Below the pieces are notes generated by a model that saw only the letters and a program-made list of their open reading frames with translations, did not search any database and had not been told where the DNA came from. The position numbers and the translations under genes are program-made. Below, in pieces: positions 7,871-62,233 of a stretch of 64,000 nucleotides of DNA (position 1 is the first letter of the stretch; every line of letters starts with the position of its first letter). The stretch covers positions 62,001 to 126,000 of the IMG/VR virus record IMGVR_UViG_3300012988_000001; one strand, 5' to 3'.

Positions 7871-7920
7871 TTCACACATCGCAGAAAACTGTGGTAAAAA
7901 ATATTGCATTCAAAAATGTT

Positions 7921-7948
7921 GGGACAAACGAAAAAAATGTGATATAAT
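7921..7948 (+). promoter_or_regulatory. GGGACA-class promoter (copy 1)
   Basis: TTGGGACAAAC...TGTGA-TATAAT, 16-nt spacer. Confidence 0.8.
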
Positions 7949-18424: not shown

Positions 18425-18429
18425 ATGTT

Positions 18430-18458
18430 GGGACAAACCCGAAATAATGTGATATAAT
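18430..18458 (+). promoter_or_regulatory. GGGACA-class promoter (copy 2)
   Basis: TTGGGACAAAC-...-TGTGA-TATAAT, 17-nt spacer. Confidence 0.8.
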
Positions 18459-44145: not shown

Positions 44146-44790
44146 ATGCTGGGTTATAAAGTAAAGACTGCGTTACCATTAGATGTTATGAAAACTCTTA
44201 AAACTTCTGGTCCTATGACCAGTGCTGAAATTGACGGTGTTAAGTTTAACTATTTCCCAGAAAAAGTTGCTACTTTTTTAAAGAATACTAAATGCATTTG
44301 TTGTGGTATTGAAGCACACGAAGTACGTTTGGAGGAAGGTAAAGGTACTCATGCTATCTTTGGTATGATGCACCTGAACGTATACGCAAGGGCTGAAACA
44401 ACATGGGGTGAGTACTGGGAACTTATGACAGTTGACCATAACATTCTCAAATCACTAGGTGGGCCAGATGTTGAATCAAACTTCAACACCATGTGCCGTA
44501 AGTGTAACCAGCTTCGTGGTTCTCGTTACCCGAATCTTGAAGACTTCCTAGCTCGTTACAAAGAGCATGGTCAGTCCTTGATCACAAGTCGTGCAACGTC
44601 CCTACACCATTACCGTTTGCGTAAGCGTGAAGAGGGTTCAGAAGAGTATCAGGCAATCGTGAAGCATCGCAATGAGATGCGTGAAGCCAAGGTTGCAGAT
44701 TATCTCAGCGGCCTATGTGCGAGCCATGTAGGGGCTTATAACCGTCATAACAAGGCGTTGAAAAAAGCCTTGACAGCCGAAACAAAATAA
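44146..44790 (+). CDS. HNH endonuclease
   Basis: CICCG ... TVDHNILKSLGG...NFNTMCRKCNQLRG. Confidence 0.85.
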   Translation: MLGYKVKTALPLDVMKTLKTSGPMTSAEIDGVKFNYFPEKVATFLKNTKCICCGIEAHEVRLEEGKGTHAIFGMMHLNVYARAETTWGEYWELMTVDHNILKSLGGPDVESNFNTMCRKCNQLRGSRYPNLEDFLARYKEHGQSLITSRATSLHHYRLRKREEGSEEYQAIVKHRNEMREAKVADYLSGLCASHVGAYNRHNKALKKALTAETK

Positions 44791-44840: not shown

Positions 44841-45221
44841 ATGAAATGGCTTAGAAAAATATTTGGAGAAAAGAACGTGAGTACTAAATGGTTTTCACAA
44901 GATATAATGAAGCAATTGGCTTATAGTTATGGTACAGTTACTGATTACGGTGAGTGGAATGAAAAGACAGAAGAGTTTGCCCCGGATACCGTTCTAGAAG
45001 TGATTCACAATGAGCAATGCGATTCGACCCGATGGAATAGCGTTCACGATCTAGTTTTTGTTGACAAGTCTACTGGTGTGACGTATCATACACGGTATGA
45101 ACAGGGTCTTACCGAATCACAAATGCTCGAACCTTTTTATTATGATAAAGAGGGTGTTGAATGTGATATTGTTGAGACATGGGAAGAACAAATTACAGTA
45201 CTTAGGTGGAAACAGAAATAA
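44841..45221 (+). CDS. hypothetical protein
   Basis: ATG 44841. Confidence 0.7.
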   Translation: MKWLRKIFGEKNVSTKWFSQDIMKQLAYSYGTVTDYGEWNEKTEEFAPDTVLEVIHNEQCDSTRWNSVHDLVFVDKSTGVTYHTRYEQGLTESQMLEPFYYDKEGVECDIVETWEEQITVLRWKQK

Positions 45222-45610
45222 TGATTAAAGATATCGATTTTTCAGGACTTGAATTTGTTAGTGCAGTAAAGAACATTACTGACATGTACGATGAAAAGAG
45301 TGTGATGTGTACTATTACTTTTTTAAAAGAAGAAGATAGTATTGCTGATAAAACTGGAATTGAAGAATTGGTAGCTCGCCTCGCACTGGAAGAGAATAAA
45401 AAGTACATTAAATTGTCGTATACTTATACTATGGTAGAAAATGAGATTGATACGGAACGCCCTGTGAAGGTACTTTTCTCAGGTATAAATAAACCATACA
45501 GAAAAACCTCCCGGTGCACCGAGGACAGTACTGATCTGTTAGAGGACATTAAATTCATCGATATGATGTTTGAACGTTCCCCTAAAGAGTTGAAACGTAC
45601 CTATCTCTAA
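45221..45610 (+). CDS. hypothetical protein
   Basis: Coupled TAATG start. Confidence 0.7.
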   Translation: MIKDIDFSGLEFVSAVKNITDMYDEKSVMCTITFLKEEDSIADKTGIEELVARLALEENKKYIKLSYTYTMVENEIDTERPVKVLFSGINKPYRKTSRCTEDSTDLLEDIKFIDMMFERSPKELKRTYL

Positions 45611-45614
45611 ACTT

Positions 45615-45643
45615 GGGACAAACGGGTTTTTTTGTGATATAAT
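45615..45643 (+). promoter_or_regulatory. GGGACA-class promoter (copy 4) driving the ncRNA
   Basis: TTGGGACAAACGGG...TGTGA-TATAAT, 17-nt spacer. Confidence 0.82.
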
Positions 45644-45649
45644 ATAGTT

Positions 45650-46135
45650 GAGGAATATCCTCAGTGTATAACCAATCCTGAATGACATGCGAAAGCGTGA
45701 GATTTTGAACCTGATCCTATCGAAAAGTAGATGGCAGTTGAGTAGTTCATTCAGTACGATGTGCAAAAGAAACCCGTCAGAAATAAAGCGTAAGTGTTTG
45801 TCAAATCCAACGAGACAGTAAATCACACGCATCACGGCAATGCGGCACAATAAATGCAGTCATCAGACTTGAACTGCACTAGATAGACATATGAGGCATA
45901 CTCACCCAGTCAAAGGGAGTCTCTTTACGGAGAGACAACAGTATTTGTTGCTGAATTAGCGAGTACTGTATGCGTGTGAGGAACACGACCGTTGTATGCG
46001 ACTGTAGTAGATGGAAACCGGACAACCCGCCATCGTTACTTTTATTTCAAATGGATACCTGTATCCAAAATTTGAGTAAATCTACAAATTCAGATTGGTT
46101 ATACTACCAGTGTCAGGTTTATCCTGATTTTTTTT
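45650..46135 (+). ncRNA. putative large structured non-coding RNA (~480 nt), family unassigned
   Basis: No plausible ORF; own promoter and terminator; 17-bp helix 45666-45683/46088-46104; GAAA and UACG tetraloop hairpins; 10-bp helix 45823-45832/45970-45979; many further stems. Confidence 0.8.
46113..46135 (+). terminator. intrinsic terminator of the ncRNA
   Basis: TCAGG-TTTAT-CCTGA-T8. Confidence 0.7.
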
Positions 46136-46308
46136 CGTCCCTCCCTTGTGGGGGGATGGAATTGGATCTCAAACCGTGTCAAATTTAATTAAAGTCAAAA
46201 CAAACAGTAGTTTGAATTAGTACGATTCATAACGAACGATAGTGAGTTATAGAAGAGTACTAATTCTTAGACAATCGAAGATTGGCTAATCACAAATAAG
46301 GAATTATC

Positions 46309-46899
46309 ATGAAGTCACATGACCTAGCTAGAAAATTATTATCTTTACCAGATTTGGAGGTTTATACTGAATTACAGTATCTAGGAAATCCAAATTGGGA
46401 GTTTAAAACAGAAAAACTCGAAGGTGATATCAAAATCACTCCTACTGGATTATTCCTAGAAACAGGAAAGTTCTATGTAAAAGGGCATTCAGATAAAAGC
46501 CCAAATGACGAACCAGTTATTGGGAGTTACTTAGTGTTCTTCAATGACGGAGTGATACTTAAGGATAGATCAGATGAGCGTCGAGTAGTGACACCAACAG
46601 TTAAATCCCTAAGTACTGGTGAAAGTCGTACTCATGAGTATGGTTCCTATAATATGGAAATCCATGACAACTATAAAGTATTCCATCGTTCACATGATGC
46701 AAATGTAGTACTGGTTACTAATAAAGAAACTTATGAAGCTAACCCACTATACAAAAACGATGATCCTAATTTTGAACATCGTTATGTGGATGACATTGAT
46801 TATGTCAAAGTACTTGTTGCGTATGACCCTGATACTTGGTATCCTACCTATCAACACATGACCTATTGGGATGCAGTGAACTATGGAAAAAGTTTATGA
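46309..46899 (+). CDS. hypothetical protein, paralog of 48335-48871
   Basis: MKSHDLARKLL..PDLEVY; DYVKVLV; RBS AAGGA. Confidence 0.75.
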   Translation: MKSHDLARKLLSLPDLEVYTELQYLGNPNWEFKTEKLEGDIKITPTGLFLETGKFYVKGHSDKSPNDEPVIGSYLVFFNDGVILKDRSDERRVVTPTVKSLSTGESRTHEYGSYNMEIHDNYKVFHRSHDANVVLVTNKETYEANPLYKNDDPNFEHRYVDDIDYVKVLVAYDPDTWYPTYQHMTYWDAVNYGKSL

Positions 46900-53463: not shown

Positions 53464-53710
53464 AGTACATCAAACTAGATTGAAGTGCTTTTTGAATCCT
53501 AAACTCAGGGCAATTCAATTCTGGACTGATGAACCATATGTAGTCGCTTCACGATTTGATAACGGTGTGTTCATAACTTACGTAATAACTCGTGTGAAGT
53601 ATGATAAGAAAACCATTTACAATAACGATTTAGTACTAACTAAAATTGAAGTACATAAACCGTTCTATAAAACTATTAAACACATTTGGAGAAAATTATG
53701 GCAGAACTAG
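53456..53710 (+). CDS. hypothetical protein
   Basis: 84 aa. Confidence 0.6.
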   Translation: MNRVHQTRLKCFLNPKLRAIQFWTDEPYVVASRFDNGVFITYVITRVKYDKKTIYNNDLVLTKIEVHKPFYKTIKHIWRKLWQN

Positions 53711-54954
53711 TAACTGAAGGTCGTAAACTTGTAACTATCCGTAAAATCAATGCGATTGATGCGATTGAGGGTGCTGACCTGATCGTAAAAGCAACCGTAG
53801 ATGGTTGGGAAGTAATCGTGAAAAAAGGTGAATTCGAAGTTGGTGATTTCTGTGTATTCTTCGAAATCGATTCCTTCCTACCAGTACAGACACAACAATT
53901 CGCATTCCTAGCTGGCAGCGGTACTAAACTCGATGAGAAAGAAGTAGAGCGTTTCCGTCTACGTACCAAGAAACTACGCGGTGTTGTCTCTCAGGGTCTA
54001 GCACTACCTGTATCTATGTTCGAAGCAGAACTAGAAGCAATTGATGAAGCTGCGGGTAATCACCCTGATTCTTATAGCCTAGCTATTCGTGATCAGCTAC
54101 TAGCACAGCTAGAAGATTCTCGTGAGGGTATTGAACAATTCCTACACGTAACTAAGTACGAACGTCCTGATGAGCGTAATGGCGGTACTGGTCTAGGTAA
54201 ATGTAAAGCGGCTGGTAACTTCCCTATCGTTATTCCTAAGACTGACGAAGACCGTATCCAGAACGTAATGGGTAAGTACATCCAGACTATGAAGGGTGTT
54301 GGTTTCCGTAAGTCTCTAAAACTAGATGGCTCTAGCCAAACTATTGCTTTCATGAGCAACCCAGATTACTACGTTGAGAAGGTTGATGATGAAGTACGTG
54401 CATGGAACGAAGAAACTCAAGAACTAGAAATCGTTGAAGTTAAACCGTATCCATTCCAGTGGGAAGATGGTCAGATTTCTATCTGCTCTCGTAACCTAGC
54501 ACTAAAATTCGATCCCGAATCTCACTTCTGGAAAGCAGCACTAAAAGATGATATCCCAGCACGTCTAAAAGAGTACTGTGTAGCTCATGATCGCCAGCTA
54601 GCTATCCAAGGTGAAGTAATGGGTCCGGGCATTCAGGGTAACCGTGAAGAACTAGAAGATTACCAGTTCTACGCATTCCGTATCTGGGACATTGACAACC
54701 GTTGCTTCCTTGATGACGGCGATTTCTTAACTCTTTGTGCACTACTAGGAGTAACTACAGTACCACAAGGTGATATTGTATACTTCTTCGATGAATATAC
54801 TTCTATCAAAGAAGCGGTAGAATCTGCTGACCATGCATCTATCAAACACAAGATCGCAGAAGGTGATGTATACAAGAGTGTTACTAAAGTGAATGGCGTA
54901 ACTGTGCACTTTAAAGTGATTAACAATAAATTCTTGCTAAAATGTGAGGACTAA
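53698..54954 (+). CDS. RNA ligase, DRB0094/Rnl5 family
   Basis: N-terminal OB module RKLVTIRKI..I..I.GAD...VDGW..IVKKGEF...VFFEIDS; motif I KLDGSS, QGEVMGPGIQGN, FYAFRIWD, EGDVYK, FKVINNKFLLK. Confidence 0.92.
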   Translation: MAELVTEGRKLVTIRKINAIDAIEGADLIVKATVDGWEVIVKKGEFEVGDFCVFFEIDSFLPVQTQQFAFLAGSGTKLDEKEVERFRLRTKKLRGVVSQGLALPVSMFEAELEAIDEAAGNHPDSYSLAIRDQLLAQLEDSREGIEQFLHVTKYERPDERNGGTGLGKCKAAGNFPIVIPKTDEDRIQNVMGKYIQTMKGVGFRKSLKLDGSSQTIAFMSNPDYYVEKVDDEVRAWNEETQELEIVEVKPYPFQWEDGQISICSRNLALKFDPESHFWKAALKDDIPARLKEYCVAHDRQLAIQGEVMGPGIQGNREELEDYQFYAFRIWDIDNRCFLDDGDFLTLCALLGVTTVPQGDIVYFFDEYTSIKEAVESADHASIKHKIAEGDVYKSVTKVNGVTVHFKVINNKFLLKCED

Positions 54955-54955
54955 T

Positions 54956-55453
54956 ATGCAATACACGTTGAAATCTTACTTTTGTAAGTACAAGATTAAT
55001 GCTCAGGAATTTACTGATATTGAGCTTGAAGCTATTTTGAGTTTGTGTAATAGTTCTGGTATTGAAAATAGTTTTTATACGGCCCAATCATTCCGTAATG
55101 CAGAATTTCATTATTTGACAGCCGTCGATCATGGTGATAAAGTTGCAAAATGTTCACAACATAATACTAAACGTGTAAATGTATCACGTGAGCAAGTGAT
55201 TGATGATTTAAAACTTTATGAAAAAAGTTCGGTTTTTATCAAACAGTCAACGACGGAAACTGATTCTCTAGTAGTATCTGTTTATAGTAGTGGTCACCCA
55301 CACTATTTTACTTATGCTTTTGACTTCAACACAAAAGTAACATACTGTTTAGTAGGAAATCAGTTCTGGGTACGTGCATCACAGAATTTCACTGAAAAGG
55401 AAATATTTAATATGCTTACGATTCAACAAGATGTTGAAATCGTTGTAAACTAA
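54956..55453 (+). CDS. hypothetical protein
   Basis: 165 aa. Confidence 0.65.
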   Translation: MQYTLKSYFCKYKINAQEFTDIELEAILSLCNSSGIENSFYTAQSFRNAEFHYLTAVDHGDKVAKCSQHNTKRVNVSREQVIDDLKLYEKSSVFIKQSTTETDSLVVSVYSSGHPHYFTYAFDFNTKVTYCLVGNQFWVRASQNFTEKEIFNMLTIQQDVEIVVN

Positions 55454-55460
55454 AAAATAT

Positions 55461-55499
55461 GCAGTTTGTTTCAAAAACTTGGGACAAACTGCTTTTTTT
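55461..55499 (+). terminator. intrinsic terminator containing the -35 of the next promoter
   Basis: GCAGTTTGTTTCAA-AAAC-TTGGGACAAACTGC-TTTTTTT. Confidence 0.8.
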
Positions 55500-55509
55500 G
55501 TGCTATAAT
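55481..55509 (+). promoter_or_regulatory. GGGACA-class promoter (copy 5)
   Basis: GGGACA-17-TATAAT, TGTGC before the -10. Confidence 0.8.
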
Positions 55510-55571
55510 TAAGTTATTAAGAAATGAGTCAACACTCAAACCAAATTATCCATTTCTGAGAGGTAGAAAAT

Positions 55572-57106
55572 ATATGTCATTCAAACAAGCAGTTATCAAC
55601 GAAACCACCGCAGCAACCGACAACGTAGCTTTCACGGCTAACGGTGCAGTCTCAAACGCAAGCTCCCTCAACTTCCTAGTTGATCTATTTGCGATTCTAG
55701 GTGCAGTTCGTGGTAAAGATTTCTCTACCTTTGAGAATCTATTCGAACAAGCATATTCCATGAACCGTAAGCTAACGCTTCAAATGGTTCTATGGGTACG
55801 TGATGTTCGCGGTGGTGCAGGTGAGCGTGAAACCACACGTCAAATCCTTCGTCACCTAGAAGCAAACCATCAACAGGATCTAGTAGAACTAATCCCAGTA
55901 CTCGCAGAGTATGGTCGTTGGGATGATCTTCTAATTTTCACTAACGATAATGTGAAGAACTTTGCTTATGCAACTATTTCTGCTAATCTAAAAGCTGGTA
56001 ACGCACTATGTGCTAAATGGATGCCTCGCGTCTATAAGCTCAAAAAAGGTGCTGATGGTACAGTGAACAAAGAATCGGTTGCAAACCAGAACCGTATTGC
56101 GAACAATCAAATTGCTCGTGAGCTAATGCAAGTGATGGGTCTAAACGAACGTCAGTACCGCAAACTACTAGCTTCTCTAAGCACTACGGTTGAACAAAAC
56201 ATGTGTGCTAAAGATTGGTCTAGTATTGAGTACTCTCATGTTCCATCTGTAGCAATGAACCGCTACCGTGCTGCTTTCATGCGTAACGACGAAACTCGTT
56301 TCACTGAATTCGGTAACAAGGTAGAAGCTGGTGAAGTTAAGGTTAATGCTTCGGCACTATTCCCTTACGATGTAACCACTAAGTTCAAGTACGGTCAATC
56401 CGACAAGGTTTTTGTTGGTCAGTGGGATGCTCTACCAGACTACTTAAACGGTGCTTCAATCCTACCAATGTGTGATACCAGTGGTTCGATGGAATGTCCA
56501 GCAGGTGCATCAGGCTCCCTAACTTGTATGGATGTAGCGGTTTCTCTAAGCCTCTATATTTCTGACAAGCAGAAAGGTGCGTTCAAGGACGTGTTCTTGA
56601 ACTTCAGCGAGTCTCCCAACTTGTTCGTACTTAAGGGTAAGAACATCGAAGAGAAGTATCGCGACCTCTGCAAGTACAAGGGTGGTGCGTACTGGGGTGG
56701 TTCTACTGATATCGGTAAGGCTTTCCACCACATCCTAAAAACTGCTGTGAAGCAGAACGTGCAACAACAGGATATGCCTGAATATCTACTAATCTTTAGC
56801 GATATGGAGTTCGACTCTACATATGCTTGGGGTGGTGTAGAGAACAACGGTAACTGGGATGTAACTGCTTATGAGTATGCTAAACAGCTATACGCTCAGA
56901 ACGGTTATGAACTACCTAAAGTTATCTTCTGGAACCTAAATGGTCGTCCGGGTAACAACCCTGTCACGATCCACGATACTGGCACTGCTATGGTATCTGG
57001 TTTCAGTCCAGCAATCCTAACTGCAATCCTAGCTGGTGAGCAAGTAGATCCTGTATCTATCATGCTAGCAGCAATTGATAAGCCTCGCTATCAAGTGATT
57101 GCATAA
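55572..57106 (+). CDS. Ro60/TROVE-like HEAT-repeat plus vWA protein (DUF2828 type)
   Basis: RDVRGGAGER, YGRWDDLL, CAKWMPR, IEYSHVPSVAM, MIDAS CDTSGSM, IFSDMEFD, FWNL; ATG 55572 behind GAGGT. Confidence 0.82.
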
Positions 57107-57113
57107 GATTACC

Positions 57114-57141
57114 GCCCCACACTTAGTGGGGCTTCTCATTT
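57114..57141 (+). terminator. intrinsic terminator
   Basis: GCCCCAC-ACTTA-GTGGGGC-TTCTCATTT. Confidence 0.7.
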
Positions 57142-57153
57142 CAAGGACTAAAT

Positions 57154-57294
57154 ATGAAACAAGTACGCAATTTCCTCTTTGCCTCTTATTTGAACTTTCG
57201 AGTATCTACGGCAATCAATCCTGTACTAACTACTTTACTCGCTGCTGTGAGTGTGGTATTCTTATATTCTGTGTTGAAAATATTCGGACTATAA
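57154..57294 (+). CDS. 46-aa membrane peptide (below the ORF-track cutoff)
   Basis: RBS AAGGA; MKQVRNFLF...VLTTLLAAVSVVFLYSVLKIFGL. Confidence 0.6.
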   Translation: MKQVRNFLFASYLNFRVSTAINPVLTTLLAAVSVVFLYSVLKIFGL

Positions 57295-57297
57295 GAG

Positions 57298-57714
57298 ATG
57301 AAAGAATACATTGAGATCGAAGGTATCATACGATACGACCCTCCCAGACATGGGATGAAACGGAACACGAACTACTGGTGTATTCTAGAATTACCTGAAG
57401 ATTTAGTTAAGTACTACCAGTACTTCGTAAAGACTGATTTACATATTCCCATCGCAGACCCTTCTTGGGGAGCACACGTCAGTATTGTACGTGGTGAGAC
57501 ACCACCTAATCCTGAAGTGTGGAAAAAGTACGATGGAAAGAAAGTAAAGATAAAATACTATCCTTACATTCATGTGAAGAAAGATCCGAAGAAAGAAGGA
57601 TTGTACTGTTTTATTGATTTTGAAGTCCCGTTCTTTCGTCAGATACGAAAAGAGCTAGGACTAGAATGTAAATATACTTTCCATTTTACTATTGGAAGAA
57701 CGCACTATGATTAG
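57298..57714 (+). CDS. 2H phosphoesterase (second copy)
   Basis: AHVSIV and FHFTIG (HxS/HxT). Confidence 0.75.
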   Translation: MKEYIEIEGIIRYDPPRHGMKRNTNYWCILELPEDLVKYYQYFVKTDLHIPIADPSWGAHVSIVRGETPPNPEVWKKYDGKKVKIKYYPYIHVKKDPKKEGLYCFIDFEVPFFRQIRKELGLECKYTFHFTIGRTHYD

Positions 57715-58297
57715 TAAAGACGTATTTTGTATTTTATATCATGGGATGCCAATTGAAGGATTCTCTTCTGCGTCCGGGCATCCCATTTTTACCAGTAATG
57801 ATAAGTTCATCCCAAATTACTCATTCAGTAGCTACGAAAGTGCTAGAGATAGTTTAACTTATATGATACAATCATTACTTGACCAGAATCATGACAGTAC
57901 TGACATGAGCTTAGTCAGCATCGGAAATATCCGAATGGAATGTAGAGAATTTACTCACATTTCTGCGTATGATGAAGCCTTGATGAACATCATGAAAAAC
58001 CAGTATAATAATCCTGCGATGATTGATCGTTATGTAGGAAAGATTATACATTTGTGTGTACGTAAGGGATTCAAAAAAACTCTCCCCCAAATGCACCAAC
58101 AATTACTCAATGACCCACAATTTGTAGAGTTACTTGATAAACATGTTCCTTTCTTTGTTCGACAGAATATTGAAAGATTCATGGATGTAGGAATTAGTGC
58201 TTGCAATGAAGAAGAGATTGCTGCTATAATTCTTACAACAGACGATGAGCTATTAAAAGTGATTCGTATAGATTCATTAAACAATGTTTCGAATTAA
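57707..58297 (+). CDS. hypothetical protein
   Basis: 196 aa. Confidence 0.65.
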   Translation: MISKDVFCILYHGMPIEGFSSASGHPIFTSNDKFIPNYSFSSYESARDSLTYMIQSLLDQNHDSTDMSLVSIGNIRMECREFTHISAYDEALMNIMKNQYNNPAMIDRYVGKIIHLCVRKGFKKTLPQMHQQLLNDPQFVELLDKHVPFFVRQNIERFMDVGISACNEEEIAAIILTTDDELLKVIRIDSLNNVSN

Positions 58298-58396
58298 CTC
58301 TTAGAGTTAAAGTAGAAAGTCCAACGAGGCTTTGTGCAAACACGGCCTCACTGTAGTCCCGTTTGTCAAGGTTTCCAAAACAAAAAGGAGAAATCA

Positions 58397-59317
58397 GTGA
58401 AAGCGATCCAAAAACTGAAAACTTTACTTTTAGTAGGTTTTCTGTTAGCGGTAGCTGCTATTGGATTTATTGGTTATAAACACAATGATCGTACACCGTC
58501 ATCAAATTTAGGTGTACAACAAGTTATTCAAATTCAAAAGCAACCGCCCGTAACGTCATTGCCAGTTCAATTAGCAACTGTCAAAGGAACTAAGACGGAA
58601 AGCAGAAAGCAGTATGTTGTCCAGAAGGGTGACACATTTTGGGTCATAGCCCAAAAAACTAAACCAATGAATGTTGAGATGTATCCGTACATTGATGTAT
58701 TCAAACAAATCAATGGTAGTATTAAAGTACTAAACGTTGATAAGCCTGTACACTTACCAAATGAGAATGATTTGAAGTCTGTTATTCTTCCAGATGTAAC
58801 ACTACATTTCGATCATCTTGACGACGAACTGATAGAGTTCATCAAACAGTCTGAAGGTTCTAAAGAACTTCAATCTGTTTTAAAAAGAAAATTACTTGGT
58901 GGAAAAGTCGGTCCATCATATAAAAATTCAAAGTTCTATCCATATAAAGATATGAAAGGTAACTATACTATTGGTTATGGTCATTATCTAGGAAAGAAAG
59001 AATCCGACGCAAATAAGTACAAAAATGGTATTACTGAGTATCAAGCGAAGAAAATACTAAAAGCTGATATGAAGCGTACTTATGATGACTTCACGTTACT
59101 ACTGCAACGTAAAAACGCAGTAAACCTTACGAAAGACCAGCAACGTATTTTATACGATATGGCTTATTCAATGGGTGTTGACAAACTTGATAAGTTTACA
59201 CGTCTATGGAAAGCTGTACAGCATGGTAATGATCGTAAATTCAAAAAAGAAATTGAAGGTTCTTTATGGTTCAAGCAAGTTGGGAACCGTGCTGAAATCC
59301 TTCTAAGTTCCCTATAA
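58397..59317 (+). CDS. membrane-anchored LysM plus T4-type lysozyme
   Basis: GTG start behind AAGGAG; N-terminal hydrophobic helix; LysM YVVQKGDTFWVIA; lysozyme SEG...YKD.KG.YTIGYGH...MAYSMG...SLWFKQVGNRA. Confidence 0.85.
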   Translation: MKAIQKLKTLLLVGFLLAVAAIGFIGYKHNDRTPSSNLGVQQVIQIQKQPPVTSLPVQLATVKGTKTESRKQYVVQKGDTFWVIAQKTKPMNVEMYPYIDVFKQINGSIKVLNVDKPVHLPNENDLKSVILPDVTLHFDHLDDELIEFIKQSEGSKELQSVLKRKLLGGKVGPSYKNSKFYPYKDMKGNYTIGYGHYLGKKESDANKYKNGITEYQAKKILKADMKRTYDDFTLLLQRKNAVNLTKDQQRILYDMAYSMGVDKLDKFTRLWKAVQHGNDRKFKKEIEGSLWFKQVGNRAEILLSSL

Positions 59318-59327
59318 GGAGTTGTGT

Positions 59328-59648
59328 ATGATTACTATTCAAGGTATCAATGTAGAAGTAACCGATGCTATTAAAGAGCACATTGAACATAATGTAGGTA
59401 AACTTTCTAAGTACAACACTAAAAACGATCTCAACATCAAAGTAAATTTGAAGGTTGAAACTAAAGATACTTTTGACGTAGATGTTATTGTTGAAGGTAA
59501 AAACATTTCTGGTGGTGCTGTTAGTGATGACATGTACACTGCTATTACCATGTCATTTGAAAATGTGGAAACTATTCTAGCTCGTCGTAAGGGCAAAGAA
59601 CTTTCCAAACGTCATGAAAAAATTCAGTTGACAGACGCAGAAGAATAA
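59328..59648 (+). CDS. hpf: ribosome hibernation promoting factor (HPF/RaiA family)
   Basis: ITIQGINVEVTDAIKEHI...KL.KY...SDDMYTAI......L.RRKGK. Confidence 0.85.
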   Translation: MITIQGINVEVTDAIKEHIEHNVGKLSKYNTKNDLNIKVNLKVETKDTFDVDVIVEGKNISGGAVSDDMYTAITMSFENVETILARRKGKELSKRHEKIQLTDAEE

Positions 59649-59657
59649 TGATATACT
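59628..59657 (+). promoter_or_regulatory. sigma70 promoter abutting a terminator
   Basis: TTGACA-18-TATACT with TG extension. Confidence 0.65.
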
Positions 59658-59685
59658 AAGGACATTCCACGGAGTGTCCTTTTTT
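59658..59685 (+). terminator. intrinsic terminator
   Basis: AAGGACATTCC-AC-GGAGTGTCCTTTTTT. Confidence 0.85.
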
Positions 59686-59699
59686 ATTTGGAGGGGAAC

Positions 59700-60107
59700 A
59701 TGGCAGTAGAAAGAATTAGAAAATTATTTGCAATTGACGAAATACCAGTAATTAATGGTTGGATATTAATTGCAGAACGTGAACAATATCGCGTTGATAC
59801 AAAAAGTCGTAATATCTATCATGAATTGTACTATTCTGATGCCGATATACTTAACATTCGTTATAGTGATACTGGTATTACTATTACTTCGTATAATTTT
59901 CGTGAAAATCTTACAACCATGAAGTTTGAATGGAAACTGCACGAAATGATGGACGAGGCAGAATATTTCCAGCTTTGTACGGTTGACGACACCTTTGGTA
60001 TAGAGTATACTGATTACCTTGAAATGTTAAAACAGTACTCCAGAATCATGACATGGGTACGAGAAAACATGGTTTCGAAAGAACCACCACGCCCATTCAT
60101 ATTCTAA
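59700..60107 (+). CDS. hypothetical protein, FFQxSTV family
   Basis: EAEYFQLCTVDD. Confidence 0.7.
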   Translation: MAVERIRKLFAIDEIPVINGWILIAEREQYRVDTKSRNIYHELYYSDADILNIRYSDTGITITSYNFRENLTTMKFEWKLHEMMDEAEYFQLCTVDDTFGIEYTDYLEMLKQYSRIMTWVRENMVSKEPPRPFIF

Positions 60108-60116
60108 GGAGAACGA

Positions 60117-60521
60117 ATGATCGACGAATTAGTTAAAGTACTGGATAATGTGACCAATAATGGGTTGGCAACACTCATCAGTGCAGAATCTGAGTGGTTA
60201 AAACTTTCTGAAATGACTGAACTCAACTACAATACAAATTCATGCCGTTTGGTAGCTAATATCATTACATCTGACGATCATGCAAATGCAGTGACATTAT
60301 GCCTTTACAAAGATATGTTTCGTATGGTCCGTTACACTGGCATCGATCCAGCTAATAATACATGTAAAGATTTGAAGAATACTAAAATTCGAATAGACAT
60401 TGGTTCTGAGGAAGAATTCTTTCAAGAATCAACAGTTGAAGATTTTAACGGATTAGTGTATGATGAATATCATGTAATACAACAAATCATAAGTGTAATG
60501 ACAAAATATCTATGGAGCTAA
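60117..60521 (+). CDS. hypothetical protein, FFQxSTV family
   Basis: EEEFFQESTVED. Confidence 0.7.
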   Translation: MIDELVKVLDNVTNNGLATLISAESEWLKLSEMTELNYNTNSCRLVANIITSDDHANAVTLCLYKDMFRMVRYTGIDPANNTCKDLKNTKIRIDIGSEEEFFQESTVEDFNGLVYDEYHVIQQIISVMTKYLWS

Positions 60522-60522
60522 T

Positions 60523-60699
60523 ATGATAGCAGTCTTAGAAGAAGATTGGGGTGTGAGTGACAGTGATTGCTACCCTCCACGTGACAAATACGGCTGGCGT
60601 GATTATGGTGTAGATAATGACGAAGCGGAAGAACAAGCAAAACTAGATCAAGAGAACAAAGAGAAACGCTCTTGGTGGGAAAAATTCTGGGGGTCATAA
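60523..60699 (+). CDS. 58-aa acidic protein ending WWEKFWGS (below the ORF-track cutoff)
   Basis: ATG 60523 behind GGAG; stop coupled to the next start. Confidence 0.7.
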   Translation: MIAVLEEDWGVSDSDCYPPRDKYGWRDYGVDNDEAEEQAKLDQENKEKRSWWEKFWGS

Positions 60700-60926
60700 T
60701 GGCATCTTTCGATTCAGCTATGGAAATGATGAAAGAAGTAGAAAAAATGCGGAGTGAGTTGGGTGTTGCACCACATTCATTGGCAGATGACGTTGTGACC
60801 ACTTTTTGTAAAGAAAAACGTGAACAAAGTAATGAAGTCACCGTAAGAGAAATTGTAAATGCTTACGTGAATGAACAAAAAACCCGTCCAACTAATCCCG
60901 CATGGGATAAATTCTGGGAGTCATAA
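60699..60926 (+). CDS. small protein ending AWDKFWES
   Basis: Coupled TAATG start. Confidence 0.7.
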   Translation: MASFDSAMEMMKEVEKMRSELGVAPHSLADDVVTTFCKEKREQSNEVTVREIVNAYVNEQKTRPTNPAWDKFWES

Positions 60927-60930
60927 AAAA

Positions 60931-61107
60931 ATGTCTATATCATTTGATGAATTACTTGACCTCATGGATGATGTTGAAGAATTAAACAATGAGGGTCGTT
61001 TACCGACCCATTTGGAAACACACGATTCAGTTGCTGAATTGTTTATTAAGCATTATGGATCAAAGAAATTAGACCGTTCCGAATGGAACTATTTTTGGGA
61101 GAACTAA
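60931..61107 (+). CDS. small acidic protein ending EWNYFWEN
   Basis: ATG 60931 behind GGGAG. Confidence 0.7.
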   Translation: MSISFDELLDLMDDVEELNNEGRLPTHLETHDSVAELFIKHYGSKKLDRSEWNYFWEN

Positions 61108-61108
61108 G

Positions 61109-62233
61109 ATGAAAAAATATATCGTCGGTGGTTTTGTACGTGATAAACTACTTGGCCTAAAACCAAAAGACAAAGACTACGTACTTGTAGGAGCCAAACA
61201 GCGTGATATTGATTATCTAACGTCCCAAGGCTACAAACAAGTAGGTGCTGACTTCCCTGTATACTTATCTCCAGCAGGTGATGAGTATGCTCTTGCACGT
61301 GTTGAGCGTAAGACGGGTAACGGATATAAAGGTTTTACTGTAGATACCGAAGGTGTAACTCTTGAACAAGATCTATTCCGTCGAGATCTCACTATCAACG
61401 CCATTGCCTACGATCCAGTATTCCAAAAACATATCGACCCATATGGTGGTAAGTCCGATCTACAGAATAAAGTACTACGTCATGTTAGTCCTCACTTTGC
61501 TGAAGACCCACTACGTATCCTACGTCTAGCTCGCTTTGCTGCTCGTTATAGCGATTTCACTATTCATAGCAGTACTGAAGAACTAGTACTCAACATGGTA
61601 AAAGAAGGTATGATTGACCATCTTACCCCGGAACGTGTATATGTAGAATTCGAAAAAGCTCTATCCGAGAATAATCCAAGTATTTTCTTCAAGAACCTAC
61701 GTAAATGGGGTGCTCTAGAACGCCTCCTACCGGGTTTGGAAGCCTTTAATAAGGCAGATGGGGAAATGCTCGATAAAATCACACAGACCAGCACAGAGGC
61801 TTACACGAACGATTTTCAGTGGTCTTTCCTACTATCCATGAGTCGTGGTGTAGTATCTAAAGATTATGCTATTGGTCAATTGAAACTACCTGCACAAGCA
61901 GTGAAGTTCTTCAAGTTTGTTACTGCTAACTTTGAAGAGATCAAGCTATTCAGGAAGAAAACACCTGAACAGATGGTTGAAATGCTAACTAAACTAAATA
62001 TCCACAACAACGGTGGTGAGGAATTCTTGTACAAAGTACTTGAGTACTTCAACATTCAGCGTGATACGGATGGTGAGCTAGAAGACCTAATTGTGAAAGT
62101 GTACGATAAATTTGAAGGCACTGTGATTGGTGATATTGACCAGATGTTGAAAGACGGAACTTTAGAGCCTAAAGAAATCCGTGCATATGTGTCGAATCTT
62201 CGCACAACTGAAGTTGCGAAAATGTTCTCATAA
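61109..62233 (+). CDS. cca: class II tRNA nucleotidyltransferase (CCA-adding), no HD domain
   Basis: YIVGGFVRD.LLG...KDKDY, EYALAR.E.K, DLFRRDLTINA, F.EDPLRILR.ARF, LTPERV..E. Confidence 0.93.
   Translation: MKKYIVGGFVRDKLLGLKPKDKDYVLVGAKQRDIDYLTSQGYKQVGADFPVYLSPAGDEYALARVERKTGNGYKGFTVDTEGVTLEQDLFRRDLTINAIAYDPVFQKHIDPYGGKSDLQNKVLRHVSPHFAEDPLRILRLARFAARYSDFTIHSSTEELVLNMVKEGMIDHLTPERVYVEFEKALSENNPSIFFKNLRKWGALERLLPGLEAFNKADGEMLDKITQTSTEAYTNDFQWSFLLSMSRGVVSKDYAIGQLKLPAQAVKFFKFVTANFEEIKLFRKKTPEQMVEMLTKLNIHNNGGEEFLYKVLEYFNIQRDTDGELEDLIVKVYDKFEGTVIGDIDQMLKDGTLEPKEIRAYVSNLRTTEVAKMFS

What the first reader, a model, noticed from the sequence alone, without database searches (positions are those of the whole stretch)
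45615..46135. Stand-alone ~480-nt highly structured ncRNA gene with its own promoter and terminator
Seen: the largest ORF-free stretch in an otherwise wall-to-wall coding window. It starts just after a GGGACA/TG-TATAAT promoter (45615-45643) and ends at a hairpin plus T8 (46113-46135). GTATAACCAATC(C)TGAAT (45666-45683) pairs with ATTCAGATTGGTTATAC (46088-46104) in 17 Watson-Crick pairs with one bulged C, closing about 440 nt. Inside: CATGC-GAAA-GCGTG (GNRA loop, 45686-45699), TCACACGCAT/ATGCGTGTGA (45823-45832/45970-45979), TGCAGT/ACTGCA (45855-45878), GTCTCTT-TACG-GAGAGAC (UNCG loop, 45919-45936), CAACA/TGTTG, GATGG/CCATC, TCAAAT-GGATAC/GTATCC-ATTTGA (46047-46075). The 3' strand of the closing helix is followed by TACCA (46105-46109), a tRNA-like end. 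Established: phages carry large ornate RNAs of unknown function (ROOL, GOLLD classes). Inference: this is a new or divergent member of that kind, possibly the partner of the Ro/TROVE-like protein or a substrate of the CCA enzyme and RNA ligase encoded 8-15 kb downstream.
Basis: partly seen in the sequence, partly recalled or inferred. Interest (0 to 1): 0.92.

Follow-up and report, generated by a model that had tools for sequence, protein, structure and literature searches.

The report
New structured RNA family in jumbo phages
This is a real, stand-alone gene for a roughly 490-nucleotide, intricately folded non-coding RNA that occurs in two to four diverged copies in each genome of one group of giant enterobacterial phages, matches no catalogued RNA family, and has no known function.

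Summary
The locus is a genuine non-coding RNA gene on the + strand. It runs from a phage-type promoter (45614-45643) through a transcript of about 486 nt (45650-46135) to a hairpin plus T8.

Homologues occur in 62 jumbo phage records and in many metagenomic contigs. Complete genomes hold two to four paralogous copies (three in most), about 80 kb apart on one strand. The window's source genome has three, one of them in the window.

Covariation is strong: 41 of 54 tested base pairs show compensatory changes, and none of 500 shuffles reached that. It supports a fold with an H-type pseudoknot near the 5' end.

- The 17-bp closing helix is clade-specific, and its inner part competes with the conserved pseudoknot.
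- Two other proposed helices conflict with covarying hairpins.
- The "tRNA-like ACCA" is not conserved.
- The Ro-like protein occurs in 710 phage records, most outside this phage group, so it is not a specific partner.

Rfam 15 and ARAGORN find nothing, so this is neither ROOL nor GOLLD.

A 12-nt segment at the RNA's 3' end is repeated about 55 nt downstream, and the two copies change together across lineages. This is unexplained. Function is unknown; my best guess is a folded RNP or ribozyme core.

The parts
45614..45643 (+). Promoter P1: TGGGACA element, 17-nt spacer, TG-n-TATAAT
   Evidence: Found by the consensus scan. The TGnTATAAT box is conserved upstream of nearly all full-length copies. 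It is one of four promoters of this class in the window (7920, 18429, 45614, 55480). It corresponds to the 'divergent RpoD-like promoter, -35 TGAAACG' described for phages CBB and GAP32 (PMC5259590).
45650..46135 (+). Primary transcript of the ncRNA, about 486 nt. The start is inferred from the -10 box and the end from the terminator.
   Evidence: Fold z = -5.55. It is the most conserved segment of the locus: 88.5% identity to phage Munch, against 59-83% for the flanking genes. No coding signal. No Rfam, tRNA or tmRNA hit.
45649..45664 (+). 5'-terminal hairpin P0 (variable in the family, absent in some paralogues)
   Evidence: Present in both the MFE and centroid folds. A hairpin of different sequence occupies the same place in the BF, CBB and GAP32 copies.
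45666..45677 (+). 5' strand of the clade-specific closing helix; pairs with 46093-46104
   Evidence: 12 bp in the window. The window, Munch and Hallingskeid carry three different complementary versions. It is not conserved family-wide.
45678..45685 (+). P1 5' strand (CUGAAUGA); pairs with 45747-45754
   Evidence: 33-38 of 38-39 sequences pair, with compensatory changes in seven of the eight pairs. Entirely different complementary sequences occur in the 121Q copies.
45686..45699 (+).
   Evidence: A hairpin of unrelated sequence sits at this position in every paralogue group.
45711..45737 (+). Hairpin Pb: 45711-13:45735-37 and 45716-21:45730-34, with a bulged U at 45718 and a conserved GAAAAGUA loop
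   Evidence: The inner pairs show 5-20 sequences with both sides changed.
45742..45757 (+). P1.1 (GUA 45742-44 : UAC 45755-57). It encloses the P1 3' strand 45747-54, giving an H-type pseudoknot. It is flanked by invariant AUGAG and CGA.
   Evidence: 40 of 40 sequences pair. The variants are GUA/UAC, GCA/UGC, GCU/AGC, GAA/UUC and GCAUG/CAUGC.
45760..45849 (+). P2 (45760-64:45845-49), enclosing P3 (45774-77:45834-37) and a variable insert
   Evidence: P2 pairs in every sequence that has both bases, with GUGC/GCAC changing to GAGC/GCUC. The P3 insert ranges from a UUCG tetraloop to about 55 nt.
45855..45878 (+).
   Evidence: All five pairs covary, with 3-5 pair types each.
45879..45919 (+). Conserved junction: CUNGAUAGAC, small helix P5 (45892-95:45901-04), invariant AAGGGA
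   Evidence: Invariant columns in 40 sequences. P5 is moderately supported.
45919..45936 (+). In the C paralogues this site carries a large insert.
   Evidence: Six of its seven pairs have compensatory changes. In the C paralogues the ACAAUAUAGAUCCGUC-type hairpin sits here instead of in P11.
45939..45968 (+). Hairpin P7 (11 bp) with a conserved loop, UUG-N-U-N-G-A/U-AU-AG
   Evidence: Up to 26 of 40 sequences have both sides changed at a single pair.
45973..45987 (+). Hairpin P8, directly before the invariant GACCGUUG
   Evidence: Forms in 18 of 18 representatives from different sequences. Helix 1 is 98.3% paired, with four of five pairs changed on both sides.
45986..46086 (+). 3' domain, a three-way junction: P9 (46003-07:46082-86), P10 (46010-14:46030-34, loop holding invariant GAAA and CAACCCGC), and P11 (46036-41:46075-79, with the variable hairpin 46047-46075)
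   Evidence: P9 and P10 pair in 40 of 40 sequences, with 5-20 double changes per pair in all but one invariant pair in each helix. The covariance model of this domain gives one hit in the window, 139.9 bits, E = 3.6e-23. In the official count, 95.3% of cells pair and the covariation score is 0.622, against 0.262 for shuffles.
46093..46104 (+). 3' strand of the clade-specific closing helix
   Evidence: See 45666-45677.
46104..46116 (+). DR1: the last conserved segment of the RNA body (CUACCAGUGUCAG).
   Evidence: It changes together with DR2 across lineages. No complementary partner exists in cis.
46112..46135 (+). Intrinsic terminator: 6-bp hairpin plus U8
   Evidence: A hairpin plus T-run is present in most copies, but there is no T-run in the divergent metagenomic copies L073 and L083.
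46139..46162 (+). GC hairpin (CCCUCCC-UUGU-GGGGGG) followed by AUGGAAU
   Evidence: GGGGGAUG is conserved in 46 of 47 full-length copies, including those with no T-run terminator. The motif is unique in the window.
46171..46189 (+). DR2 (AAACCGUGUCAA), abutting an AT-rich -10-like box (TTTAAT here, TATAAT in most copies)
   Evidence: Covaries with DR1. It is not a general promoter motif in the window: 19 loose matches against 21 expected by chance.
46215..46285 (+). Conserved downstream elements: UGAAUU-type motif, a variable hairpin, AAUUCUU-GAC, and a 5-bp hairpin with a G-N-A triloop (46272-46284)
   Evidence: Conserved after most copies of all paralogue groups, including BF copy C, which has no downstream gene on that strand. 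The stem covaries: CAAUC/GAUUG, CAUUC/GAAUG, CUAAC/GUUAG.

Best explanation
Shown: 45650-46135 (+) is a stand-alone gene for a non-coding RNA of about 486 nt. It is driven by a phage-specific sigma-70-type promoter and ends at an intrinsic terminator. It is one copy (paralogue A) of an undescribed family of large structured RNAs. The family is confined to a clade of 340-380 kb T4-like jumbo phages of enterobacteria and Xanthomonas (Asteriusvirus, Eneladusvirus, Mimasvirus and unclassified relatives). Complete genomes carry two to four diverged copies, three in most.

The conserved fold has three parts:
- a 5' domain built on an H-type pseudoknot (P1/P1.1, with hairpins Pa and Pb);
- a central set of hairpins (P2-P8);
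- a 3' three-way junction (P9-P11).

Long invariant single-stranded stretches (AUGAG, CGGCAAU, GAUAG, AAGGGA, GACCGUUG, GAAA, CAACCCGC) lie in junctions and loops.

Inferred: the RNA works as a folded particle, not as a message or a leader. Most likely it is the conserved core of a ribonucleoprotein, or a ribozyme, made during infection and acting in trans. The invariant junction nucleotides would form the binding or active site. The variable hairpins would be peripheral struts. One of these (the ACAAUAUAGAUCCGUC hairpin) sits at P11 in the A and B copies and at P6 in the C copies.

The partner or substrate is unknown. Identity as a new structured RNA gene family: about 0.95. The trans-acting RNP or ribozyme mechanism: the value given below.
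For: Transcription signals. Strand-specific fold stability.

Homologues in 62 of 50,697 phage records, all jumbo phages. 26 IMG/VR loci and 41 metagenome loci. Only one hit among 185,579 bacterial and archaeal species genomes, on a 212-kb contig of a metagenome-assembled genome, probably a phage contig binned with it (not checked).

Copy positions of two to four per genome.

Covariation:
- RNAalifold predicts 73 pairs, 46 with compensatory changes.
- My 54-pair model including the pseudoknot is 94.5% canonical, with 41 pairs changed on both sides. None of 500 shuffles reached this, and slid controls gave 34-46%.
- The official count on the 3' domain gives a covariation score of 0.622, against 0.262 for shuffles (0 of 500) and at most 0.10 for slid controls.

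The RNA is more conserved than all neighbouring genes. There is no coding signal.

The copies are stand-alone. BF copy C and the metagenomic copy L060 have no downstream gene on their strand. Most copies have a terminator.

A peripheral hairpin occupies alternative sites in different paralogues. This is typical of RNAs with a defined three-dimensional architecture; that point rests on my own knowledge of RNase P and group I introns.
Against: No partner protein, substrate or activity is identified. No transcript data exist for any phage of this group; none were found in the literature.

A purely trans-acting RNA does not explain why about 150 nt after the terminator travels with every copy: the GC hairpin, DR2 plus its -10-like box, and the leader hairpins. 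It also does not explain why DR1 and DR2 change together.

Two divergent copies lack a T-run terminator, so the true 3' end may lie further downstream.

Many invariant columns cannot be assigned to pairs. Part of their invariance reflects how the copies were found: the search patterns required GACCGTTG and CAACCCGC.
Confidence: 0.42

Rival explanations
1. Locus-tethered RNA that makes an R-loop or primer. The folded RNA stays at, or returns to, its own locus. Its 3' segment DR1 has the same sequence as the non-template strand at DR2, so it can pair with the template strand there. That would form a persistent RNA-DNA hybrid next to the AT-rich box. The hybrid would then either prime leading-strand synthesis (a replication origin, like ColE1 RNA II or T4 oriF/oriG) or open the downstream promoter.
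For: DR1 and DR2 covary as direct repeats through at least five independent changes: CCGUCAG, GUGUCA, ACGUCAA, CGUCAAG, CUUCAAG and ACGAAG, plus ACC versus AUC. No complementary partner exists in cis. DR2 is not a general motif.

An invariant G5-6 run lies between the repeats. The downstream elements are kept even where no gene follows.

In the complete genomes with three copies, these lie on one strand about 80-84 kb apart.

The promoter replaces the -35 box with a phage-specific element, as T4 middle promoters do. T4 oriF and oriG consist of such a promoter plus an AT-rich unwinding element and act through R-loops, and oriE carries 12-nt direct repeats (PMC3016281).

ColE1 RNA II is about 550 nt and needs an upstream G-rich RNA segment to pair with downstream template DNA. 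This last point is from my own knowledge (Masukata and Tomizawa 1990) and was not checked here.
Against: The region after DR2 is only 70-73% AT, against 62% genome-wide, and no richer than the regions after other promoters. GC skew shows no inflection at the locus.

A terminator stands between DR1 and DR2 in most copies. DR1 is partly base-paired within the RNA.

Known origin transcripts are not nearly this intricately or deeply conserved. The regular spacing is inherited through synteny and may mean nothing.
Confidence: 0.22
2. Self-assembling architectural RNA of the ROOL/GOLLD type. The RNA, or the three paralogues together, would form an RNA-only multimeric particle.
For: It matches in size, ornateness, phage origin and unknown function. 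Several paralogues persist per genome. ROOL, GOLLD and OLE form homo-oligomers, as seen by cryo-EM (bioRxiv 10.1101/2024.12.08.627333, listed).
Against: There is no homology to those families. I found no consistently palindromic loop that could mediate kissing contacts: by my inspection, the P7 loop holds a 4-6-nt palindrome in some paralogues only (loops). No tRNA genes lie nearby.
Confidence: 0.12
3. Non-coding mobile or recombination cassette. The whole module of about 750 bp (promoter, RNA, terminator, GC hairpin, second promoter) would be a selfish or regulatory cassette. It would spread or shuffle like the promoter-early stem-loop (PeSL) cassettes of T4-type phages, with DR1 and DR2 as recombination handles.
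For: It is multi-copy. It is an island of high identity: between EJP2 and the Salmonella phages the RNA is 89% identical, while no flanking DNA matches at megablast level. A terminator-plus-promoter unit follows each copy. HNH endonuclease genes lie nearby in the window, Munch and XaC1.
Against: The copies sit at syntenic positions in all genomes, and the paralogues are old (about 60% identity). Compensatory changes show selection on RNA structure, which a DNA cassette does not need. No empty site or target-site duplication flanking the whole module was found.
Confidence: 0.08
4. One reading: a Y-RNA-like partner of the Ro/TROVE-like protein, or a tRNA-like substrate of the CCA-adding enzyme and RNA ligase encoded 8-15 kb downstream.
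For: The window does encode an RNA ligase (53686-54954), a Ro-like DUF2828/DUF7788 protein (55466-57106) and a CCA-adding-type nucleotidyltransferase (61109-62233). The Ro-like gene has the same promoter type. The window copy carries ACCA just before the terminator.
Against: The Ro-like protein is found in 710 phage records of many families, most outside the phage group that carries this RNA. ACCA is not conserved among the paralogues. There are no Y RNA, tRNA or tmRNA hits. The RNA is four to five times longer than known Y RNAs (own knowledge). The other copies lie 80-160 kb from that cluster.
Confidence: 0.04
5. A cis-regulatory leader (riboswitch or attenuator) of the downstream gene 46309-46899.
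For: It lies upstream of a gene on the same strand and contains a terminator.
Against: The downstream genes differ among the three paralogues. BF copy C and L060 have no downstream gene on their strand. A separate promoter-like box follows the terminator. At 450+ nt, the size far exceeds known leaders.
Confidence: 0.03

Closest known systems
ROOL and GOLLD RNAs (large ornate RNAs, often phage- or prophage-borne; the function of the particles is unknown)
   Same: A large (about 0.5 kb), intricately folded, phage-encoded stand-alone RNA. It has many conserved unpaired nucleotides and no known function.
   Different: There is no sequence or structure homology: no Rfam hit at the gathering score or at E<=10. 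It is not next to tRNA genes. It occurs as two to four old paralogues per genome. It carries a conserved post-terminator module with co-varying direct repeats. It is restricted to virulent T4-like jumbo phages of Gram-negative hosts.
ColE1 RNA II pre-primer and the T4 oriF/oriG origin transcripts
   Same: A promoter-driven, structured non-coding transcript of about 0.5 kb. An upstream RNA segment (DR1) could pair with downstream template DNA (DR2), and a conserved G-run lies nearby. The promoter carries a phage-specific -35 substitute, as T4 middle promoters do. There are several copies per genome, as with T4's five origins.
   Different: The fold is far more elaborate and far more deeply conserved. 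A terminator lies between the RNA body and the putative hybrid site. There is no clear AT-rich unwinding element. Origin activity is untested.
omega-RNA/HEARO and other guide-scaffold RNAs
   Same: A large conserved pseudoknotted scaffold, multi-copy in a genome, with a short terminal segment that matches nearby DNA.
   Different: No TnpB, IscB or other nuclease or recombinase gene is adjacent in any of the three contexts. The matching segment is only about 12 nt, and a terminator hairpin follows it.
phi29 pRNA
   Same: A phage-encoded structured RNA with its own promoter that acts as a folded particle.
   Different: There is no homology. This RNA is about three times larger and has several paralogues. 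T4-type packaging motors are not known to use RNA (own knowledge).

Membership tests
ROOL / GOLLD (Rfam families) | Match to the family covariance model | tested here: not met
   cmscan against Rfam 15 gave 0 hits at the gathering score in the 64 kb window. At E<=10 on 45500-46400 it returned only noise, with scores of 20 bits or less. Nothing was found within the RNA of five paralogous loci.
ROOL / GOLLD (Rfam families) | Frequent placement beside tRNA genes in phages or prophages (own knowledge of the family descriptions) | tested here: not met
   ARAGORN finds no tRNA in the whole window.
tmRNA / tRNA-like RNA | An acceptor-like helix formed by the 5' and 3' ends with a conserved 3' CCA, a T-arm and a tag reading frame | tested here: not met
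   ARAGORN finds no tmRNA and Rfam finds none. ACCA is replaced by AUCA in other copies. The closing helix is clade-specific. No conserved ORF exists.
Y RNA / YrlA (Ro partner) | An RNA of about 100 nt with a Ro-binding bulged stem, co-occurring with the Ro gene and usually adjacent to it | tested here: not met
   No Rfam hit. The RNA is about 486 nt and lies 9.3 kb from the Ro-like gene. The Ro-like protein is in 710 phage records, against 62 for the RNA.
Group I / group II introns, RNase P RNA | Match to the covariance model. For introns, also insertion within a host gene. | tested here: not met
   No Rfam hit. The element has its own promoter and terminator and lies between complete genes.
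Origin pre-primer RNA (ColE1 RNA II, T4 oriF/oriG type) | A promoter-driven transcript running into the initiation site | tested here: met
   Promoter P1 is conserved in nearly all copies. Whether transcripts read through the terminator is unknown.
Origin pre-primer RNA (ColE1 RNA II, T4 oriF/oriG type) | An RNA segment able to form a persistent hybrid with downstream template DNA | tested here: inconclusive
   DR1 equals DR2, and the two covary. This is what such pairing predicts, but hybrid formation itself cannot be tested here.
Origin pre-primer RNA (ColE1 RNA II, T4 oriF/oriG type) | An A+T-rich DNA unwinding element at the hybrid site | tested here: inconclusive
   70-73% AT after DR2, against 62% genome-wide. 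This is similar to the regions after other promoters.
Origin pre-primer RNA (ColE1 RNA II, T4 oriF/oriG type) | Replication initiates at the locus | not testable with these tools
   GC skew is uninformative, with no inflection at the locus.
Riboswitch / leader | Always lies upstream of a regulated gene on the same strand | tested here: not met
   BF copy C lies between minus-strand genes. L060 lies between genes on the opposite strand.
Protein-coding gene or pseudogene | A conserved reading frame, codon periodicity and indels in multiples of three | tested here: not met
   Variable columns fall 130/131/134 by position mod 3. Only 19% of indel runs are multiples of three. Annotators call different tiny ORFs on different strands.

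The most novel reading that the evidence does not exclude
The RNA is the active part of a new kind of phage replication or transcription initiation module. A ribozyme-like folded RNA would recognise its own locus by pairing its 3' segment (DR1) with the template strand at DR2. That would create an R-loop that primes or licenses DNA synthesis. Three or so such RNA-defined origins would exist per jumbo phage genome. Alternatively, and equally novel, it is a new class of large ribozyme.
Probability: 0.25. Interest if true: 0.9.

Novelty: new member of a known kind. Interest (0 to 1): 0.78.

Why it matters
Large RNAs with complex folds backed by strong covariation are rare, and most that are understood have turned out to be ribozymes, RNP cores or guide scaffolds. 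This one is backed by dozens of compensatory base changes and includes a pseudoknot. It is maintained in two to four old paralogues per genome and is the best-conserved DNA segment of its neighbourhood. It occurs in culturable, lab-tractable phages of E. coli, Salmonella, Serratia, Erwinia and Cronobacter, so its function can be tested directly. In most records examined it is unannotated or covered by spurious mini-ORFs. The co-varying direct repeats give a concrete, falsifiable handle: does the RNA talk to its own DNA? If it does, this would be a new way for a T4-like phage to mark origins or promoters.

Tried and rejected
1. Rfam 15 at the gathering score and at E<=10, on the window and on paralogous loci: nothing.

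2. ARAGORN: no tRNA or tmRNA.

3. PA5oct ncRNA002, a 451-nt RNA-seq-defined ncRNA of a related jumbo phage (PMC7318152). It shares none of the invariant motifs by eye, and the covariance model of the 3' domain does not hit it. It is not a detectable homologue.

4. Pairing of AUGAGUAG with the 3' CUACCA, proposed by one RNAalifold run. Rejected because GUA (45742-44) covaries perfectly with the local UAC (45755-57), while the 3' partner does not follow.

5. The inner CGG/CCG helix inside the P10 loop: not kept in the B and C paralogues.

6. A genome-wide column-pair covariation scan: swamped by the split between paralogue A and the rest, so not usable on its own.

7. A search for a sequence complementary to DR1/DR2 within each module: none found.

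8. DR2 as a general promoter element: chance-level matches only.

9. GC skew and AT content as origin signatures: uninformative.

10. Co-distribution with the Ro-like protein: fails.

11. Hammerhead-like reading of CAGAUGAG...CGA, and RNase-P-P4-like reading of ACAGAGCAACCCGCUU. These are resemblances from memory only. The defining nucleotides do not fit, and the Rfam models do not hit.

12. A palindromic kissing loop in P7: not consistent across paralogues.

13. mafft-qinsi structural alignment was not available.

14. An empty-site comparison between EJP2 and 121Q: the flanks are too diverged.

15. Literature searches for any description of this RNA: none found.
Full report
**1. The observation**

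I read 45300-46500.

- The promoter GGGACA-17 nt-TATAAT with an upstream TG (45615-45643) is one of the two best promoter-like sites on either strand of the 1.8 kb scanned. The hairpin 46112-46128 plus T8 (46128-46135) is called as a terminator. The scan found 4 terminator-like sites against 0.8 expected.
- As RNA, the + strand of 45645-46135 folds to -140.6 kcal/mol, with z = -5.55 against dinucleotide shuffles (0 of 100 as good). The - strand gives z = -2.54.
- The stretch is not literally ORF-free: it contains mechanical ORFs of 44-103 aa. Across 40 homologues, however, variable columns show no codon periodicity (130/131/134 by position mod 3), and only 19% of indel runs are multiples of three.
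- Annotators of related genomes either leave the gap empty or call different 30-40-aa ORFs on different strands.

**2. Where it occurs**

The window is 100% identical to IMG/VR UViG_3300012988_000001 = Ga0164306_10000001, a 366,160-bp contig.

blastn finds the region in 62 of 50,697 phage records. All those listed are 337-378 kb jumbo phages:
- Escherichia (Asteriusvirus: 121Q, PBECO4, EJP2);
- Serratia, Erwinia and Yersinia (Eneladusvirus: BF, fHe-Yen9-04);
- Cronobacter, Pectobacterium and Xanthomonas (Mimasvirus: GAP32, CBB, XbC2);
- unclassified Salmonella and Klebsiella phages (Munch, 7t3, fENko-Kae01). These are the closest relatives, at 86.6% identity.

A pattern built from the most conserved core found 26 loci in IMG/VR and 41 in metagenomes. 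The metagenomic set includes clearly more distant lineages (L047, L060, L071, L073, L080, L083).

In one representative genome from each of 185,579 bacterial and archaeal species there is a single hit. It lies on a 212-kb contig of an Enterobacteriaceae metagenome-assembled genome, which is probably a phage contig binned with it (not checked). The element therefore belongs to this phage group, not to cells.

**3. It is a multi-copy family**

Complete genomes carry two to four copies, and most carry three.

| Genome | Copy positions (kb) | Source |
|---|---|---|
| Serratia phage BF | 93, 175, 259 (all + strand) | |
| Window's source genome | about 107.9 (the window copy), 188.2, 269.5 | |
| AGFT01054919 | 61, 143, 223 | |
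| One 355-kb contig | four copies | |

- In most genomes the spacing is about 80-84 kb. The positions are syntenic, so the spacing is inherited.
- Only one copy lies in the window.
- The paralogues are old, about 60-65% identical to each other within a genome. Each has orthologues across genera. I collected 47 distinct full-length copies, which fall into 17 clusters at 80% identity.

Their neighbourhoods differ:
- Copy A sits after a DUF7325 gene and before small genes and a Dps-like gene.
- Copy B sits before an ADP-ribosylglycohydrolase gene.
- Copy C sits between the endonuclease VII and baseplate-hub genes, both on the opposite strand.

Copy C and the metagenomic copy L060 have no downstream gene on their own strand. 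This rules out a leader or riboswitch.

**4. Conservation**

The RNA is the best-conserved DNA of its neighbourhood.
- Against phage Munch it is 88.5% identical, while the flanking genes are 59-83%.
- Against the BF group it is 73% over about 446 nt, while the neighbours are 59-68% or undetectable.
- Between EJP2 and the Salmonella phages the RNA is the only part of a 3.5-kb locus that matches at megablast level, at 89%.

**5. Structure**

On 40 sequences, RNAalifold predicts 73 pairs, 46 of them with compensatory changes.

Combining this with hand analysis of 30-47 copies, the family-wide helices in window coordinates are:

| Helix | Coordinates | Note |
|---|---|---|
| P1 | 45678-85 : 45747-54 | |
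| Pa | 45686-99 | hairpin |
| Pb | 45711-21 : 45730-37 | |
| P1.1 | 45742-44 : 45755-57 | |
| P2 | 45760-64 : 45845-49 | |
| P3 | 45774-77 : 45834-37 | insert ranges from a UUCG loop to 55 nt |
| P4 | 45855-59 : 45874-78 | |
| P5 | 45892-95 : 45901-04 | weaker support |
| P6 | 45919-25 : 45930-36 | |
| P7 | 45939-49 : 45958-68 | |
| P8 | 45973-77 : 45983-87 | |
| P9 | 46003-07 : 46082-86 | |
| P10 | 46010-14 : 46030-34 | |
| P11 | 46036-41 : 46075-79 | plus a variable hairpin |

P1.1 encloses the 3' strand of P1, so the two form an H-type pseudoknot. Both are independently supported:
- P1 appears as CUGAAUGA/UCAUUCAG, CUGAUUGA/UCAAUCAG, CUGUUGAA/UUCAACAG, ACAACGG/CCGUUGU and UGUGG/CCACA.
- P1.1 appears as GUA/UAC, GCA/UGC, GCU/AGC, GAA/UUC and GCAUG/CAUGC.

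The loop geometry fits a classical pseudoknot. One or two nucleotides cross the deep groove of P1, and P1 and P1.1 share a continuous strand. This is inference.

The statistics are as follows:
- For 54 pairs including the pseudoknot, 94.5% of cells are canonical, and 41 pairs carry changes on both sides.
- None of 500 column shuffles reach the canonical percentage, the number of doubly changed pairs or the number of doubly changed cells. The count of extra pair types was reached by 2 of 500.
- Sliding the partner by 1-3 columns drops pairing to 34-46%.
- Reading the complementary strand drops it to 90.3%, which favours the + strand.

For the official pair count I used a covariance model of the 3' domain (R1). 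It hits the window once (45969-46117, 139.9 bits, E = 3.6e-23) and each homologous locus once. The count on those matches gives 95.3% paired and a covariation score of 0.622. Shuffles give 0.262 (0 of 500 reach the observed value) and slid controls at most 0.10.

Long invariant unpaired stretches lie in junctions and loops: AUGAG, CGGCAAU, GAUAG, AAGGGA, GACCGUUG, GAAA and CAACCCGC. Part of that invariance is an ascertainment effect, because my search patterns required two of these motifs.

A peripheral hairpin of the ACAAUAUAGAUCCGUC type sits in P11 in the A and B copies but in the P6 position in the C copies. This is the behaviour of a tertiary-contact module.

**6.

- The 17-bp closing helix exists in the window and its nearest relatives. 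Its distal 12 bp (45666-77:46093-104) even show compensatory differences between the window, Munch and Hallingskeid.
- That helix is not a family feature. Its inner UGAAU/AUUCA part competes with P1.
- The 10-bp 45823-32/45970-79 helix competes with P8, which forms in 18 of 18 representatives, and with a local hairpin in the P3 insert.
- CAACA/TGTTG competes with P7.
- ACCA is not conserved: CUAUCA, CCAUCA and CCACCA occur instead. In the B and C copies, by my reading of the alignment, it lies in the loop of a GACGA/UCGUC hairpin.

**7. What it is not**

- Rfam 15 gives nothing at the gathering score across the whole window, and only noise at E<=10 on the region and on paralogous loci.
- ARAGORN finds no tRNA or tmRNA.
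- It is therefore not ROOL, GOLLD, tmRNA, RNase P, a group I or II intron, a Y RNA or any other curated family.
- PA5oct ncRNA002 is a 451-nt RNA seen by RNA-seq in a related jumbo phage (PMC7318152). It shares none of the invariant motifs, and model R1 does not hit it.
- I found no paper describing this RNA.

The promoter type has been noticed before. The CBB paper describes a "divergent RpoD-like" promoter with TGAAACG in place of the -35 box, enriched before DNA-synthesis genes (PMC5259590). The window has four of these, including the one in front of the Ro-like gene.

**8.

- an RNA ligase (53686-54954; PHA02142 OB fold plus RNA_ligase);
- a CCA-adding-type nucleotidyltransferase (61109-62233).

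The Ro-like protein has full-length homologues in 710 phage records, among them Felixounavirus, mycobacteriophages, and Listeria, Staphylococcus, Campylobacter and Vibrio phages. Most lie outside the 62-record phage group that carries the RNA. There is no specific association.

**9. Beyond the terminator**

Conservation does not stop at 46135. Nearly every copy, in every paralogue group, continues with:
- a GC hairpin and GGGGGGAUGRAAAU (46139-46162; this motif is unique in the window);
- a motif next to an AT-rich -10-like box (46171-46189);
- in most copies, a variable hairpin, AAUUCUU-GAC, and a small covarying hairpin with a G-N-A triloop (46272-46284).

Two divergent copies (L073, L083) have no T-run terminator, but they keep the GC hairpin and the motif.

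The most curious point is a pair of direct repeats. The last roughly 12 nt of the RNA body (DR1, 46104-46116) and the motif before the -10-like box (DR2, 46171-46182) have the same sequence, and they change together:
- GUGUCA in the window clade;
- CCGUCAG in the BF, CBB and GAP32 copy A;
- ACGUCAA in XaC1;
- CGUCAAG in 121Q;
- AUC-UCGUCAG in the B and C copies;
- CUUCAAG in L047;
- ACGAAG in L060, L071, L073 and L083.

Different paralogues within one genome differ at these positions, while DR1 and DR2 within one module agree. So the match is kept module by module.

I found no complementary sequence in cis. DR2 is not a general promoter motif.

Sequence identity between an RNA segment and a downstream DNA site is what one expects if the RNA must pair with the template strand there. 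Examples are an R-loop anchor or primer, as in ColE1 RNA II (own knowledge), or the R-loop origins oriF and oriG of T4, which consist of a middle-type promoter plus an unwinding element (PMC3016281).

Against this, the DNA after DR2 is only modestly AT-rich (70-73% against 62%, no more than after other promoters). GC skew is featureless. A terminator intervenes in most copies.

**10. Verdict on mechanism**

- That this is a new family of structured RNA genes is about as certain as sequence analysis allows.
- How it works is not known.
- On base rates and on the architecture (pseudoknotted core, invariant junctions, swappable peripheral hairpin, discrete gene with promoter and terminator), I favour a folded RNA that acts as the core of an RNP or as a ribozyme, in trans, at about 0.4.
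- The locus-tethered R-loop or primer model is the main rival, at about 0.2. It is the only one that explains the co-varying repeats and the conserved post-terminator module.
- The models are separable with ordinary experiments in laboratory strains. These are listed under the next steps.

Noticed in passing
window 53686-62233: An RNA-repair-type gene set: RNA ligase (PHA02142 OB fold plus RNA_ligase, 53686-54954), a Ro-like DUF2828/DUF7788 protein (55466-57106) and a CCA-adding/poly(A)-polymerase-family enzyme (61109-62233). A lysozyme with a weak, sub-threshold LysM match (58334-59317) lies in between.
   Followed up: partly
window 46104-46116 and 46171-46182 (and all related loci): Direct repeats DR1 and DR2 flank the terminator and GC hairpin. 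They change together across lineages and paralogues, and no complementary partner exists in cis. Unexplained.
   Followed up: yes
window 46215-46285; L039, L040: A conserved downstream leader-like element follows most RNA copies. It includes a 5-bp hairpin with a G-N-A triloop whose stem covaries. In BF copy A the loop holds the Shine-Dalgarno sequence of the next gene. At BF copy C no gene follows; only a 4-codon mini-ORF and a bidirectional terminator.
   Followed up: partly
window 7920-7948, 18429-18458, 55480-55509: Three further promoters of the TGGGACAAAC...TGTGATATAAT class, all on the + strand. The one at 55480 precedes the Ro-like gene. The class matches the 'divergent RpoD-like promoter' reported for CBB and GAP32.
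   Followed up: partly
window 44146-44790: A free-standing HNH homing endonuclease gene lies two genes upstream of the RNA. In Xanthomonas phage XaC1 an HNH endonuclease gene directly abuts the RNA locus.
   Followed up: no
window 45206-45610: The gene immediately upstream of the RNA encodes a DUF7325 protein (E = 1.6e-47). No DUF7325 gene is annotated beside BF copies B and C.
   Followed up: no
whole genomes: BF, Ga0164306_10000001, AGFT01054919, UViG_3300031414: The RNA copies lie about 80-84 kb apart on the same strand in the complete genomes with three copies. One 355-kb contig (Ga0308169_10000037) has four copies, at about 70, 150, 166 and 246 kb.
   Followed up: partly
whole window: No tRNA gene and no Rfam family at the gathering score anywhere in the 64 kb. 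The window corresponds to roughly 62-126 kb of contig Ga0164306_10000001.
   Followed up: yes
L041 (Pseudomonas phage PA5oct 21951-22401): The annotated 'putative lncRNA' ncRNA002 of PA5oct is similar in size (451 nt) and highly expressed according to PMC7318152. It shows no detectable relation to this family.
   Followed up: yes
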